A program made the translations under genes and the position numbers. A DNA stretch of 63,853 nt, the filler included, from Reticulomyxa filosa (taxonomy: Eukaryota > Protista > Foraminifera), in the NCBI GenBank assembly GCA_000512085.1. It is 16 parts of 16 records of this genome, joined end to end, with 100 filler letters (N's around TTAATTAATTAA, not from the genome) between each part and the next. Parts side by side here need not be neighbours in the genome. Positions count along the whole stretch, not along the records: positions 52,248 to 55,673 come from ASPP01003431.1; 15 more parts are not named here. One strand, 5' to 3'. The notes beneath the pieces are model-generated. The model worked only from the letters and a program-made list of their open reading frames with translations. It was not told where the DNA came from and ran no database searches. Positions 52,248 through 57,155 of this stretch are shown one piece after another; the first letter of the stretch is position 1; each line of letters opens with the position of its first letter.

Positions 52248-53233
52248 CATTCAATTGCTTTATCGTATTCTTCTTTACAGTCATAAACAAGTCCCAAATT
52301 GTGGTACAAACTATAGATATCATAATGATCAGGTTCTAATTGTTCCAACTTAACTTTTAATGATCTTTTATAATATTCAACTGCTTTATCATATTTCCCT
52401 TTCTTATTATATGTTCTACCTAACCAATCACAAGACTTACTAATATCGATATGAGAACTATGTAATGTTTGCAAGCTAATGCAAAGTGAAAAACGAAATA
52501 ACTCAATTGCTTTGTCCAAATTTTGAATATTGAATGAATCTATTCCTAATTCCATTAACTCCTCTGTGTCAATAGGCCAAGAATAAGTGAAAACAGGATA
52601 ATTGAAATTACAACGAATAACAGAATTATTTGTGTGAATAAGTTGTTGAGTAATATCACAATTTCCAATTGCATCAATAATACAATCAATAGCATAAATA
52701 CATCCATCAATTGTAATATTATCAAATATAATTTTTTTTGAAAAAAAAGAATAAATAGAATATTGTCCAAATGTCGATATTTTTTTCATATGTTTAAGTG
52801 AAGTAATCATCATTGAAAAAGGCATATTTCGTGGAGATAATTGTTCATTTGATTTTGCAACAACAATAATTCCTTGTTGCTTGTTATTGATCATTTCATT
52901 TACCATTTCATGTGCTTTTTTATTTGCTTCATTCCATAAAAGATCTTGATCAATTTCAATATTTATATTTGATTGATGATATGAATGATCTTTATTGTAA
53001 AGAAAAACATGTCGATCACACATTGTGATAACTTGGAAAATTTGTCCAGTCAATGCTTTTTGTTCAATCAATTTTGAAATTGACATTAAATTACTATCCA
53101 ATGATTTTGGCAATTTAATATTTTGTGACATAATATTACAAAAACATTCCGTAAAATAACTTCCCTTTTCAAATATTAATTTTTCAGGAGTTGTTGAAAA
53201 TATTATAAAAGTATCTGATTCATTGTTATACCA

Positions 53234-53265
<32 letters not shown>

Positions 53266-54079
53266 GTTGATATTGTTCATTTCTTCGATATACATTTTTA
53301 ATAAATATTTTTGGTCTATTTAAAAATGTATTTGTGTCATATGTAAATAATTGTTGTATTTTTTTAAATGATATATATTTGTCATTATCTGATGTTATTA
53401 ATATATCTCCTTCTTCTTCTTCTTCTGATATTTTATCACCATGACCACACCATACAAATATTAATGAATCATACTTCTTTTCATTATTGTTTGTGCAATG
53501 CTTCATTGAAAAATGATTTAATTGATTTAATGTCAATAATTCAGTTTCAGGTTTATTTGGATCATAAGTAGAATATACTTCATATCCATATATTTCTTCA
53601 AATAAATTTCGAAACATGATTAAATCTAATTTTACTTCAGGCAAATAATCTAAACTATTATATTTCAAAGCACCAGTTAACAATACTAATGGATTCATAA
53701 TCTTGTAGCGTTCATTTTCTTCTTCTTTTTTTTTTCTTCTGGATATTTCTCTTCGTCATTGTCGTTGTCTATTTTAAATTAAAAAAAAAGTAAATAAGTA
53801 AATGAATAAAAAAAGAGAAACAAAACTGCCAATGGGATAAACAAAAAAGAAAACAGGTTGCATTTCAAATGAAATTTTTAATTGTTGATCATTGATAATT
53901 TCTTGTTTATTATTATCAACAATTTTAAAATGGCGCATAGAGTTTATTGTTTTCTTGTTATCATCTTTGATGTTCACAATCTTTACCACTTCTTCTTCCA
54001 AGCTTTTCAAGTTTAGAGAAGCAAGCGTTAGTTCATGCGCTTTTCCTTCAAAATAAACAAAAACCTTATAAGATGACAT
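52248..54079 (-). CDS. PB1/ubiquitin-like + caspase-like (peptidase C14, catalytic Cys->Tyr) + TPR protein, 3' truncated
   Basis: Exon 1 YKVFVYFEG..FKIVD..IINDQQL. Caspase-like LIFVWCGHG, RPKIFIKNVYRR, DTFIIFSTTP..GSYFTECFC. TPRs LGRTYNKKGKYDKAVEYYKRSLKVK and NLGLVY..YDKAIE. A-run frameshift at ~53730. Confidence 0.8.
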
Positions 54080-54619
54080 TTTTTGTTCAGCTCGTAGTTT
54101 AGTAGTTATTATGAAATAAAAAGTTTTATACTTCGTTTTTTTAAAACCCTTTTTTAGTCTCTTTTCACATTTATATGTTCTTTTAAACTGTAGCAATGTT
54201 TATAATTTGAAAAATTATTTTCAAAATTATTGCTGTGAAGATATACATAACAGCTCAAAAGACCAGAACAAAACAAACTCGTTTGCATATGCTTCAAGCA
54301 CTCGGGGTCAAATCTTTTCATTATTAAAAAGGGGTAGTTTTATTTTTAATGAAACGCGTTTAAAAAAGAAATTACATATATTACTGAGTTTTGTTTTTTT
54401 TGTTAACGCGTTTTTGGTGTTCTCTTTCATTGATCTTGAAAGAAAAAAGTTCAAACATTTTTCATCTTGTATCAGCTAAGACGAACTCAAAAAGAAAAAA
54501 TAAGAATGGCCACCCCCAGAGCAATGAAAAGCAAGCTTTAATACAGTCAGTATTGGTAATCTTTATTTCAGTCTTTCAAAAAAGTAGTCGTACTCATTGT
54601 GTGTTTTATGATTAAACAA

Positions 54620-55115
54620 GTTAGAAGAAGAAGATATCAGAGTGAGTATCTGGAATTGGATTTTGGTGACCGTGTGGGAATCACAGATTTGGCCGAGGAA
54701 GAGGTATGAGTCGAATGGACAATATGAACATGGGAATGGGAATGGGAATGGGAATGGGCATGCGAATGCGTCGATTGCAGATCCCAGAGGAAAGAGTCGA
54801 TCTCCAAAAGAGGGACGTGGCTCAAGACTCGAATAGAGTAACACCAATGATGTTGTCGTCAATGCCACCGTTCCACCAATTGATTCAACTGATGCATCCA
54901 ATATGTCTGCTCCCATTGTTGAAACCGTCACTGCTGCTGATGCACAAATCGAAGGAGAGCAACCAGGCATTGAAACAACAGAGCCCACACAACCCGTCTA
55001 TAAAATATCGGAGACAAAAGGACCTGCGAATAGACATTTGTACAACAGTTGCAATGTCGCTTTTTTTGCAATTTTTGATGCTGGTTTTGTGTCACTCAAA
55101 TGCTCGCAAAGTTGA
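54620..55115 (+). pseudogene. Low-complexity coding fragment with an in-frame TAG
   Basis: Open reading GNGNGNG..SRLE*SNTNDVVVN..SQS*, with a stop at 54834-54836. Confidence 0.3.
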
Positions 55116-57155
55116 GTCACAAACATACGTATACGCTTTGGCTCCATTGCAAAGCGCAGTTTATATCATCTAATTCGAATATATGAGCACTTCCTGTAAA
55201 TTGGTCAAATTGCCAATCTCCAGTAAGTCTTTTTTTTTTTTTTTTTTTTTTTAATTCGTAAACAAAACACAAAGCATCGAAAAGATGTGCAAATTGGATT
55301 TAGATACCAATAGTTTAAACTGATCAAATTTTCAATTGTGTATGGTATAGTATCGGAAAAAAAAAAAAGTTTGTCAAAACAATCTTCTTTATGTTGGCTT
55401 GTTGTTTATATCAACTAATTTCTTTTAAATAATCTCAAAATAATAGTTTCAATTTGTCAAATAAATGAACGATTCACATTCTCTTTTGAAGTTTTGACAG
55501 CTCCACTTCATTTCAGTTAATATGTGAAAAGAAAAGATTTTTTGTCATAAAAACTCAATTTCACTGGCTCGTGTTTGATGTAATTTGAAATTTTACTTAA
55601 TTCGGAAAAACATTGAACTATGTCAGCACACTTCAAAGAATAACTCCCTTCAAGCAAAAAAAAAGTTATAATGNNNNNNNNNNNNNNNNNNNNNNNNNNN
55701 NNNNNNNNNNNNNNNNNTTAATTAATTAANNNNNNNNNNNNNNNNNNNNNNNNNNNNNNNNNNNNNNNNNNNNGATATCGTTTTATGCTTTCAGTTTTCT
55801 TTGCAACCTACTGTATTTCACAACACACCACTTCACACTACATCATACCATACATCATTCACACGCCACTACTACACATAATGTTTTGTGTACATATACA
55901 TGTATGTATATCTGTGATGTACAATATGGAACTGTATTGTAAAGGAATCGACGAAGATTGTAGATCAATTTCAGCAAGTCACAGAGAATGGCAGATTGCA
56001 TCAAAAATATTCAAATGTGTCAACAGCATCATTACATCGTTATATATTAGATTGATTGCATTAAGATTATATAATTCAACAAAACAAAGACATTTAATTT
56101 AATACAATGTAAGCAAAAGAGTGTATTTTACAAACGCAGAAATTTTGAAAAACTGTAGTCCTATTTAGAAAAATCACTTTTTAAATTATTGTATATCTTT
56201 TTGTACAAAAGAATTACTTCGCTGACAAAAATGTTAGAGATATAAACAACTTTTGTAACTTTATGATTAAAACATTAAGAGCATTTTCATCTGTTGAAAA
56301 AAAGAATGTTTTACGTTACTGACTTCTCCAGTATTCGTTGTCTCAACTGTTTTGATTGTCTTATTTGTTTCCACAACATTCTTTATATCAAAATAAGTTT
56401 AATATTTTTAATAGTTTGCATTATTTTTTATTGAACTTTTTTTCATAAATAACCCCTTTTTTTTTAGCACAATTTTTTTATTGTTAAATACTGTTGAACA
56501 AAATTTGATTGTAAAAATTTTAAAAAATTACAATTGAATTTTTGTTGAATTATCATTTAATTTCTCCTTTTGAAGAAAATTTTTTCATAGCAATTTAGTT
56601 ACAAAGATATACATTTGAAAGAATTGTGATGTCAGAAATAGACTTCTCTTGAAACAAAGATAAAACAGGAAATGATTGAAATAATTATAGCTTTGAGTTA
56701 AGTCTAATGTGTTTTATCAATTTCGTTTATTTAAATAAAGACAGATGAAAAAATGGATACTTTTTACAAACATTAAACAAAGATATTACAAAGACAAAAA
56801 TATTTCCATAAACATCCTTGCAAGTTTCTTCATTTTTCTGGCAGAAATTGAGTTCACTAAATAGTGATCTGCTTTGTGTAAAGAAAAGAGAAAAAAATGA
56901 AATTTTGAACAAGCAAAACTACGTCGTGTTAAACTTAGGCGCTCCAAGATGTGAAGCTATCATTGAGCATCGTCAAGCTGGCACTGGACTTGAAAATACA
57001 AAGAAACAATAAACAGATTTCACCAGGCTCAGCACTACCAAAATAATTTTACTTGAAACACAAAAAGAAAAAAAAATTATACAAAGATATTATTTGTATA
57101 ACAATTGAATAAGTAACAAAAAAAGAAAACATGCCCAAAGTATTTTTAAAAAATT

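What the first reader, a model, noticed from the sequence alone, without database searches (positions are those of the whole stretch)
52248..54079. PB1-like + pseudo-caspase + TPR protein: NLR/immune-receptor-like architecture in a protist
Seen: a caspase-fold domain with both p20-like (GHG, PKIFI) and p10-like (D..IIFST..GSYF..C) motifs, joined by a polyQ linker. It is preceded by a small PB1/ubiquitin-like domain and followed by kinesin-light-chain-type TPRs. Known: the PKIFI/GS.F motifs are closer to true caspases/paracaspases than to metacaspases; caspase-family + TPR fusions act in bacterial defence; PB1 domains polymerise. Inference: an oligomerising sensor-protease of a protist innate-immune or cell-death system, with this copy a catalytically dead regulator (cFLIP-like).
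Basis: partly seen in the sequence, partly recalled or inferred. Interest (0 to 1): 0.8.

Follow-up and report, generated by a model that had tools for sequence, protein, structure and literature searches.

The report
PB1-like pseudo-caspase TPR protein, Reticulomyxa
This is a real gene of the foraminiferan Reticulomyxa filosa encoding a PB1-like domain, a caspase-like domain that has lost its catalytic cysteine, an unclassified middle domain and TPR repeats; it is one of about a hundred paralogues, most of them also catalytically dead, whose nearest outside relatives are bacterial caspases linked to NACHT, WD40 or ankyrin modules.

Summary
The piece is a 3,426-bp Reticulomyxa filosa contig, and the minus-strand gene is RFI_03718 (partial).

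- **Caspase domain:** Pfam Peptidase_C14, E 4e-15. His is kept (CGHG); the catalytic Cys is Tyr (KNVYRR).
- **TPRs:** TPR_12-type repeats run off the piece's edge.
- **N-terminal exon:** it folds (pLDDT 85) as a beta-grasp. Its best structural matches are PB1 domains (MEKK3, MEK5, NBR1, Par6, p62, Bem1; Z 8.7-9.9). Sequence support is only marginal.
- **Splicing:** joining of this exon to the caspase exon is supported by a homologous intron in the closest paralogue and by the same domain order in dozens of paralogues. No RNA data were available.
- **Middle domain:** the roughly 130 residues between caspase and TPRs match no solved or predicted fold.
- **Family:** 606 representatives at E<=1e-3. 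Only 12 of 63 scorable Reticulomyxa-type caspase domains keep the His/Cys dyad.
- **Affinities:** animal caspases are the best PDB and Atlas matches, not metacaspases. The closest outside sequences are metagenomic, some in bacterial gene context, with intact dyads and fused or adjacent to NACHT, WD40, ankyrin, Kelch or TPR.

No STAND NTPase is present, so "NLR-like" is only an analogy. A non-catalytic, oligomerising regulator or sensor is the best reading, but it is untested. Caspase-like proteins in Reticulomyxa were already published (Klim 2018); the architecture and the dominance of pseudo-enzymes were not mentioned in the papers I could search.

The parts
53827..54079 (-). Exon 1: start codon (54079) and the PB1-like beta-grasp domain (about 84 aa)
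   Evidence: AF2 model with an 18-paralogue alignment: pLDDT 85, topology b-b-a-b-a-b. VIA-align top hits are PB1 domains: MEKK3 Z 9.9, MEK5/MEKK2 9.6, NBR1 9.4, Par6 9.1, p62 8.8, Bem1 8.7. 7 of the top 10 Foldseek hits are PB1. 7 of 10 Atlas structure neighbours are PB1 proteins. The domain is conserved at the N-terminus of paralogues.
53725..53826 (-). Intron as in the NCBI model (GT at 53826-25, AG at 53726-25; 102 nt). The homologous short intron would be 53769-53826 (58 nt)
   Evidence: The paralogue locus L001 has the same donor (A|GTTTTG) and an acceptor (AAAATAG|AC) followed by in-frame NNDNDEKKYPEDKKKK. In this copy that segment is 53 nt against 54 nt, which puts it out of frame within an A-run. 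P0001, the NCBI model, skips it. P0002's locus shows the same long-intron solution.
53050..53724 (-). Caspase-like Peptidase_C14 domain, p20-like and p10-like halves joined by a Q-rich linker; His kept, catalytic Cys replaced by Tyr
   Evidence: Pfam PF00656 E 4.3e-15. Family profile against the PDB: Dronc 2.2e-6, caspase-3 4e-5. Dyad columns extracted; codons TAT and CAT.
52600..53049 (-). Family-specific middle (MID) domain: a long helix, an alpha/beta part and a short beta-helix-like part; no known fold (limits approximate)
   Evidence: AF2 pLDDT 75. Foldseek PDB best E 0.57. VIA-align best Z 4.3. Atlas TM by the model at most 0.41. No Pfam hit. In every paralogue I scanned it is followed by TPR arrays.
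52248..52599 (-). Start of the KLC/NPHP3-type TPR array, cut off by the piece's edge
   Evidence: TPR_12 E 2.5e-11, plus TPR_1, TPR_2, TPR_10 and TPR_NPHP3. Full-length paralogues carry 3 to 11 TPR_12 stretches.

Best explanation
The gene (RFI_03718) encodes a non-catalytic member of a very large, apparently Reticulomyxa-specific family. The domain order is a PB1-like beta-grasp 'prodomain', a caspase-like C14 domain, an orphan middle domain and a KLC-type TPR array.

**Shown**
- The domain identities.
- Retention of His and loss of the nucleophile Cys (Tyr) in this copy.
- Purifying selection since the split from its closest paralogue.
- A minority of paralogues with intact dyads.
- A PB1-like domain placed directly before the caspase domain in two separate Reticulomyxa subfamilies.

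**Inferred**
- The TPR array binds a ligand or partner.
- The PB1-like domain makes head-to-tail homo- or hetero-oligomers with other family members. It would play the part that CARD or DED prodomains play in animal initiator caspases.
- The dead caspase domain acts as a scaffold, decoy or heterodimer partner that tunes the few active paralogues, as a cFLIP-like or pseudo-enzyme regulator.
- The size of the family, its variable repeats and swapped modules, and its kinship to bacterial NACHT-associated caspases point to a conflict, cell-death or self/non-self function rather than housekeeping.
For: - **Domains:**
- **Dyad survey:** of 63 Reticulomyxa-type representatives with both columns aligned, 12 are H/C, 15 Y/Y and 13 H/Y (this copy is H/Y); the rest carry other substitutions. 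Of 22 environmental relatives, 20 are H/C.
- **Selection:** dN/dS against the closest paralogue locus is 0.29 over caspase plus MID (304 codons) and 0.46 over the PB1-like exon.
- **ORF:** a 483-codon open frame in 26% GC DNA.
- **PB1-like features across 83 N-domains:** beta1 Lys in 61%, and an acidic loop D-x-N/D-G-x-D/E-I-E-x-D-E. This copy has K5, D55, E60 and D64.
- **PB1-like domain directly upstream of intact caspases:** P0147, P0153, P0159 and P0067.
- **Family size:** 606 representatives at E<=1e-3 and 105 at E<=1e-30. There are modular variants (N-MID-TPR without a caspase; MID-TPR-PB1-CASP) and variable TPR number.
- **Outside relatives:** fused to NACHT (P0101), WD40, ankyrin, Kelch or TPR, or sitting immediately upstream of a NACHT-WD40 gene.
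- **Tree:** the main Reticulomyxa family lies on one side of a branch with SH-aLRT 96. This copy is sister to P0006, in a subclade that also holds intact members (P0002, P0008, P0014, P0019).
Against: - There is no expression, interaction or phenotype evidence. No RNA run was listed.
- PB1 assignment rests on predicted structure. Sequence support is marginal (E 0.062 and 0.17), and CIDE-N and ubiquitin-like folds score only 1-2.5 Z lower.
- No NTPase switch is present, so the way such a protein would be activated is unknown.
- With the homologous short intron, the linker between exon 1 and the caspase exon is 1 nt out of frame. The gene is intact only with the longer intron of the NCBI model or if the A-run is miscalled.
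- KLC-type TPRs would equally fit a cytoskeletal adaptor.
- dN/dS of 0.29-0.46 is only moderate constraint.
- Not every 'Reticulomyxa-type' representative was checked by name. 34 were.
Confidence: 0.45

Rival explanations
1. It is a cytoskeletal or transport adaptor. The KLC-type TPR array binds motor cargo in Reticulomyxa's very active microtubule network, the PB1-like domain acts as a scaffold, and the dead caspase domain is merely a protein-binding module. The family would then have expanded for transport rather than conflict.
For: TPR_12, TPR_10 and TPR_NPHP3 are the kinesin-light-chain type of repeat. One paralogue is named 'Kinesin light chain' by NCBI (P0015). Many paralogues lack the caspase domain altogether and are N-MID-TPR.
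Against: No kinesin-light-chain heptad or heavy-chain-binding region turned up in Pfam. The same TPR type is common in STAND and NLR-like proteins. The caspase domain's closest outside relatives sit with NACHT, WD40 or ankyrin modules. Intact-dyad paralogues persist.
Confidence: 0.2
2. This particular copy is a decaying pseudogene of the family. It has lost its nucleophile and carries a frameshift in the linker after exon 1.
For: Cys is replaced by Tyr. With the intron position that is homologous in the closest paralogue, the A-rich linker is 53 nt instead of 54 nt and reads out of frame. No RNA evidence was available.
Against: The 483-codon frame is open to the piece's edge (chance about 2e-21). 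dN/dS against the nearest paralogue is 0.29. A later acceptor restores the frame, and the same solution applies to P0002, which has an intact dyad. The break lies in a run of A's, where a base-calling error is plausible; this last point is my inference, and I could not check the sequencing platform.
Confidence: 0.15
3. It is still an active peptidase that uses another nucleophile or a neighbouring Cys. For example, the conserved Cys of the WCGHG motif would compensate for the lost QACRG-type Cys.
For: His is kept, and a Cys two residues before it (WCGHG) is nearly invariant in the family.
Against: No precedent is known to me in clan CD. Many paralogues also lose the His (32 of 63 have Tyr), which argues for relaxed selection on catalysis. 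His to Tyr and Cys to Tyr are each single transitions towards A/T in an AT-rich genome.
Confidence: 0.05

Closest known systems
Animal caspases (MEROPS C14A), especially prodomain-bearing initiators, and the pseudo-caspase cFLIP
   Same: The p20/p10-type C14 fold. The motifs (S/G)HG, KPK-hydrophobic-F-I...(A)C(R)G and GS(W/Y)F. The best PDB and Atlas matches are caspases. An N-terminal homotypic-interaction-type domain precedes the protease domain. Dead paralogues sit beside active ones, as cFLIP does beside caspase-8.
   Different: The prodomain is a beta-grasp (PB1-like), not a death fold. The catalytic Cys is Tyr. In the alignment, the caspase Gln of QACRG is Asn and the Arg before GSWF is not conserved. 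A long C-terminal MID-TPR extension is present. The closest sequences outside Reticulomyxa are bacterial-context proteins, not animal ones.
Bacterial caspase-like effectors of STAND/NACHT conflict systems, and fungal NLR-like proteins with C14 domains
   Same: The caspase domains share motifs with this family (NPLVLLxGA.KY...LPGV, YDxLIF..GHG, TSD, KPKIF.K.ACRG). They are combined with repeat sensors (TPR, WD40, ankyrin, Kelch).
   Different: Those proteins keep the dyad (20 of 22). They are fused to, or lie next to, a NACHT NTPase (P0101; L008). The Reticulomyxa family has no NTPase, and it adds the PB1-like and MID domains.
PB1 domains (p62, NBR1, Par6, aPKC, MEKK2/3, MEK5, Bem1, Cdc24)
   Same: The fold and topology, with Z 8.2-9.9 and rmsd 2.0-2.6 over 71-77 residues. 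A Lys on beta1 and an acidic loop where the OPCA motif sits.
   Different: There is no significant sequence match. The acidic loop is about two residues shorter than OPCA as I recall it, and in this copy several of its positions are Asn or Gln. I know of no other PB1 domain fused to a caspase. CIDE-N domains score almost as well (Z 7.5-8.2).
TPR-CHAT (Csx29, 'Craspase') of type III-E CRISPR systems
   Same: A caspase-fold peptidase joined to a TPR domain in a defence context.
   Different: It belongs to a different clan-CD family (CHAT), has the opposite domain order, is RNA-guided and is catalytically active. This comparison is from general knowledge and was not tested here.

Membership tests
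Peptidase C14 (Pfam PF00656, caspase fold) | Significant match to the family profile above the gathering score | tested here: met
   56.5 bits against a cut-off of 21.4, E 4.3e-15, profile positions 5-213 of 233.
Peptidase C14 (active enzyme) | His-Cys catalytic dyad | tested here: not met
   His is present (CGHG). The Cys column holds Tyr (KNVYRR, codon TAT), as shown by the alignment to caspase-3 and Dronc and by the family alignment.
True caspases (C14A) as opposed to metacaspases and paracaspases | Closer in sequence and structure to C14A than to C14B | tested here: met
   All 60 PDB sequences found at E<0.01 are caspases-3, -7 or Dronc. Atlas feature neighbours score 0.94 to caspase-7/-1/-3-like clusters, and structure neighbours reach TM 0.77-0.81 to caspase-6/-8/-4/-10-like clusters. 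Klim 2018 reports 92-95% bootstrap support. I did not build a tree that includes reference caspases.
True caspases (C14A) | Asp-specific S1 pocket (the Gln of QACRG and the Arg before GSWF) | tested here: not met
   In the HMMER alignment to caspase-3 the Gln position is Asn or Ile in the family, and the SWRN Arg aligns to a non-basic residue. The roles of these residues come from established caspase literature.
PB1 domain (PF00564) | Significant profile match | tested here: not met
   This copy gets no hit. The best among 7 paralogues is E 0.062. The Bem1 PB1 structures score E 0.17-0.25 against the family profile.
PB1 domain (PF00564) | PB1-type beta-grasp fold | tested here: met
   AF2 pLDDT 85. 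PB1 domains head both the VIA-align list (Z 9.9-8.7) and the Foldseek list. The independent Atlas (ESM) model gives PB1 proteins for 7 of 10 neighbours.
PB1 domain (PF00564) | Interaction surfaces: basic Lys on beta1 (type B) and/or an acidic OPCA motif (type A) | tested here: inconclusive
   K5 is present (61% Lys across 83 domains). The acidic loop is conserved as D75%, D/E40%, E49%, D79%, but it is shorter than OPCA. This copy has D55, E60 and D64 only.
KLC/NPHP3-type TPR repeats | TPR_12 or TPR_10 profile matches above the cut-off | tested here: met
   TPR_12 at 44 bits against a cut-off of 30.1 in the piece. Full-length paralogues have 3-11 stretches.
NLR / STAND immune receptors | Central NACHT or NB-ARC P-loop NTPase between the effector and the repeats | tested here: not met
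   No NTPase family appears in Pfam. No Walker A motif is found in six members, while the control P0101 has one. The MID model matches no NTPase.

The most novel reading that the evidence does not exclude
Reticulomyxa has built a STAND-less repertoire of about a hundred genes for innate immunity, cell death or allorecognition. A PB1-like beta-grasp replaces the death-fold prodomain. Most members are pseudo-caspase sensors or regulators carrying variable TPR arrays, and a few PB1-bearing active caspases are the executioners. The protease module shares recent ancestry with NACHT-associated caspases of bacteria that may be protist-associated.
Probability: 0.25. Interest if true: 0.8.

Novelty: new variant of a known kind. 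Interest (0 to 1): 0.6.

Why it matters
Caspase-like proteins that resemble animal caspases are rare outside animals. Reticulomyxa's have been used as an outgroup, and as an argument that caspases are ancient in eukaryotes (PMC5982838, PMC10959488, PMC10565124).

This analysis adds four points:
- These proteins are multi-domain.
- Four in five have lost catalytic residues.
- They carry a PB1-like prodomain in place of a death fold.
- Their closest outside relatives are bacterial-context caspases tied to NACHT or repeat modules.

Together these bear on two questions: whether the Reticulomyxa genes reflect ancestry or transfer, and how homotypic-oligomerisation prodomains were recruited to caspases more than once. 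The family also provides a natural series of active and dead paralogues for studying pseudo-protease regulation in a giant syncytial protist.

Tried and rejected
- **Word-index search with the N-domain region of P0002:** it found only the query, which is uninformative.
- **RNA evidence:** The look-up of sequencing runs listed no run, so read laying was not used and splicing could not be tested.
- **MID domain:** Foldseek against the PDB, VIA-align wide and the Atlas shape search gave no convincing match. Partial similarity of its last 55 residues or so to beta-helix fragments (Z 3.4-4.2) is too weak to name.
- **GTDB genome scans:** the broad caspase alignment had no searchable block. P0101 alone found nothing. 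A narrower alignment found two short MAG contigs. They are binned to different phyla from one sample, so I do not trust the phylum labels. The RuvX and endonuclease III neighbours on L005 do show a bacterial context.
- **Bacterial contamination as the source of the window's gene:** rejected, because the gene has spliceosomal-type introns that are homologous among paralogues, sits in 26% GC DNA, and belongs to about a hundred paralogues on Reticulomyxa contigs.
- **The rest of the piece (54080-55673):** no Pfam or Rfam match.
- **The Reticulomyxa genome paper:** not held in the library.
- The exons were searched by reference, and the NCBI model P0001 was used as returned by the tool. The alternative model (58-nt intron plus a frame correction) was not built.
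- **Tree:** this is the quick IQ-TREE result, because the careful search did not finish. It contains no reference caspases or metacaspases and is rooted at the midpoint only.

Full report
**What is there.** The piece (52248-55673) is a whole 3,426-bp contig of the freshwater foraminiferan Reticulomyxa filosa. The word search returned a 100%-identical NCBI protein, RFI_03718 (partial, 541 aa, P0001), from a contig of exactly that length.

The gene lies on the minus strand. The ATG is at 54079. A first exon encodes about 84 residues. A second ORF runs from 53698 to the edge at 52248 and stays open for 483 codons. In DNA of 26% GC the chance of such a stop-free frame is about 2e-21.

- Pfam gives Peptidase_C14 (56.5 bits, cut-off 21.4, E 4.3e-15) over residues 6-213 of the long ORF.
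- Pfam also gives TPR_12, TPR_1, TPR_2, TPR_10 and TPR_NPHP3 over residues 390-483. There the piece ends, so the TPR array is truncated by the edge.
- A profile of 16 paralogous caspase domains (A4) aligned to caspase-3 and Dronc puts GHG on the caspase SHG. It puts the family's Tyr on the Cys of QACRG.
- In this copy the His codon is CAT and the Cys position is TAT, Tyr. So His is kept and the nucleophile is lost: a pseudo-caspase.

**The N-terminal exon.**
- By sequence it is nearly silent. This copy gets no Pfam hit, one of seven paralogues gets PB1 at E 0.062, and the Bem1 PB1 structures score E 0.17-0.25 against the family profile.
- An AlphaFold2 model built on 18 paralogous N-domains is confident (pLDDT 85) and has the order beta-beta-alpha-beta-alpha-beta.
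- Foldseek's best hits are PB1 domains: NBR1, p40phox, PKC-iota/Par6, MEK5 and Bem1, with TM 0.55-0.69. Their E-values are only 4.5e-3 or weaker.
- VIA-align against 48,161 chains puts PB1 domains at the top: MEKK3 Z 9.9 (rmsd 2.0, 72 aligned), MEK5/MEKK2 9.6, NBR1 9.4, Par6 9.1, p62 8.8 and Bem1 8.7. CIDE-N domains follow at 7.5-8.2 and generic ubiquitin-like domains at about 7.3-8.
- The ESM Atlas's own, independent model of P0001 gives PB1 proteins for 7 of its 10 nearest structural clusters, with TM 0.68-0.75.
- Across 83 N-domains of the family, the beta1 Lys is present in 61%. The loop corresponding to the PB1 OPCA motif is acidic (D 75%, D/E 40%, E 49%, D 79%). This copy has K5, D55, E60 and D64.

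I therefore accept "PB1-like beta-grasp" at fold level. I do not file the domain as a Pfam PB1 member, and its oligomerisation remains an inference.

**Is exon 1 part of the same gene?**
- The same N-domain precedes the caspase domain in dozens of paralogues.
- In the closest paralogue's locus (L001, RFI_22788) the DNA shows a homologous intron. Its donor is A|GTTTTG and its acceptor AAAATAG|AC, and in-frame NNDNDEKKYPEDKKKK then leads into the caspase domain.
- In the window the same donor (53826) and acceptor (53770-69) exist. However, the following A-rich stretch is 53 nt instead of 54 nt, so it runs out of frame.
- The NCBI model instead uses a later acceptor (AG at 53726-25, a 102-nt intron), which restores the frame. 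The intact-dyad paralogue RFI_27043 needs the same long-intron solution.
- Either reading joins the two domains. No RNA run was listed that could decide between them.
The exons were searched by reference, and P0001 was used as the tool returned it.

Between the caspase domain and the TPRs lie about 130-150 residues (MID) that are conserved in the family.
- The model (pLDDT 75) shows a long helix, an alpha/beta part and a run of short strands.
- Nothing convincing matches it: Foldseek E>=0.57, VIA-align best Z 4.3 and Atlas TM<=0.41.
- It has no Walker A motif, whereas the NACHT control P0101 does.
- It is followed by a TPR array in every paralogue I scanned.
- There is therefore no STAND NTPase, and "NLR-like" describes only the layout.

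**The family.**
- A profile of N + caspase + MID, searched against 1.84 billion representatives, found 606 proteins at E<=1e-3 and 105 at E<=1e-30.
- Every hit carrying the N or MID domain whose source I checked is from Reticulomyxa (34 checked by name).
- The architectures are modular: N-CASP-MID-TPR, N-MID-TPR without a caspase, MID-TPR-N-CASP (P0067) and Kelch-N-CASP (P0159). TPR number is variable.
- Of 63 Reticulomyxa-type caspase domains with both catalytic columns aligned, 12 are His/Cys, 15 Tyr/Tyr and 13 His/Tyr (as here). The rest carry other substitutions.
- His to Tyr and Cys to Tyr are each single transitions towards A/T.
- In a quick maximum-likelihood tree the main family lies on one side of a branch with SH-aLRT 96. 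This copy is sister to RFI_22788, within a subclade that also holds intact members.
- Against that sister, dN/dS is 0.29 over caspase plus MID and 0.46 over the N-domain. This argues for a constrained, non-catalytic function rather than decay.

**Affinities of the caspase domain.**
- At E<0.01 the family profile hits only animal caspases in the PDB.
- Atlas feature and structure neighbours are caspase-3/-6/-7/-8-like clusters. Bacterial 'EACC1-associated' and nSTAND1-linked caspases are a little further away, and no metacaspase cluster was listed.
- This agrees with Klim et al. 2018, who reported caspase-like proteins in Reticulomyxa grouping with animal caspases (PMC5982838). One of these proteins has since been used as an outgroup (PMC10959488).
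- The Asp-pocket residues are not conserved in the alignment, so these are caspase-like proteins, not demonstrably Asp-specific caspases.
- The nearest sequences outside Reticulomyxa are metagenomic proteins with intact dyads. They share the motifs NPLVLLxGA.KY, LPGV, YDxLIF..GHG, TSD and KPKIF.K.ACRG.
- Those proteins are fused to WD40, ankyrin, NACHT, Kelch or TPR.
- Some of them sit in bacterial gene context: RuvX and endonuclease III on L005, RecA and ankyrin genes on L007, and a caspase gene directly upstream of a NACHT-WD40 gene on L008.
- L007 even carries a Cys-to-Tyr caspase-TPR protein (P0143).
- The direction of any transfer is undetermined.

**Interpretation.** The best-supported reading is a non-catalytic scaffold or regulator.
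- The TPRs would act as the binding or sensing part.
- The PB1-like domain would act as a homotypic recruitment module, the role CARD and DED play for initiator caspases.
- The dead caspase domain would act as a partner or decoy for the few active, PB1-bearing paralogues.
- The family's size, modularity and bacterial NACHT-linked kin favour a conflict, cell-death or self/non-self role.

All of this is inference; I put it at about 0.45. The rivals are a cytoskeletal adaptor (0.2), a pseudogene copy (0.15) and residual activity through another nucleophile (0.05).

**Novelty.** Caspase-like genes in Reticulomyxa are published. The PB1-like prodomain, the orphan MID domain, the TPR fusion, the predominance of pseudo-enzymes and the bacterial STAND-associated kin are not mentioned in the papers I could search. 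The genome paper itself was not available. I rate this a new variant of a known kind, namely caspase-fold effector plus repeat-sensor proteins.

Noticed in passing
window 54500-55150: A GC-richer island (0.43, against 0.26-0.27 around it) holds a hexanucleotide microsatellite (GGGAAT-type units, about 54727-54770) that would read as (MG)n in one frame. The ORFs here have no Pfam match and the stretch has no Rfam match.
   Followed up: partly
L001 4001-6539 (ASPP01019946.1): The closest paralogue is annotated as two genes: RFI_22788 (421 aa, ending inside MID), and a 384-aa product that starts inside MID and continues into TPRs. They look like one PB1-CASP-MID-TPR gene split by the annotation or by a short intron or frameshift.
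   Followed up: partly
P0013 and P0015 (Reticulomyxa proteins): The NCBI names 'ABC transporter' (P0013) and 'Kinesin light chain' (P0015) are attached to members of this PB1-caspase-MID-TPR family. By domain content the names look wrong.
   Followed up: partly
L008 7718-12618 (ENA ctg335059): In a compact, bacterial-looking contig, a caspase gene with an intact dyad (P0104) lies immediately upstream of a 1193-aa NACHT-WD40 gene. The arrangement looks like an effector plus STAND-sensor pair.
   Followed up: no
L007 5129-8582 (ENA ctg230364): A bacterial-context contig (RecA and ankyrin-repeat genes) carries a caspase-TPR protein with Cys replaced by Tyr (P0143) and a second dead fragment (P0145). 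Loss of the nucleophile to Tyr is therefore not confined to Reticulomyxa.
   Followed up: no
L004 and L005 (GTDB MAG contigs JBCCHO010000269.1, JBCCFU010000119.1): Two short contigs from one sample (P01_B01) both encode caspase-ankyrin proteins, yet they are binned to Chlamydiota and Bacteroidota. At least one bin assignment is doubtful. L005's neighbours (RuvX, endonuclease III) are bacterial.
   Followed up: partly
P0147, P0153, P0159, P0067 (Reticulomyxa): A second Reticulomyxa subfamily has the PB1-like domain directly before a caspase domain with an intact dyad (ICGHGE / DACRG). In some members this pair sits at the C-terminal end, after Kelch or MID-TPR modules. In the quick tree P0147 and P0153, the two members included, fall among the environmental sequences rather than with the main family.
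   Followed up: partly
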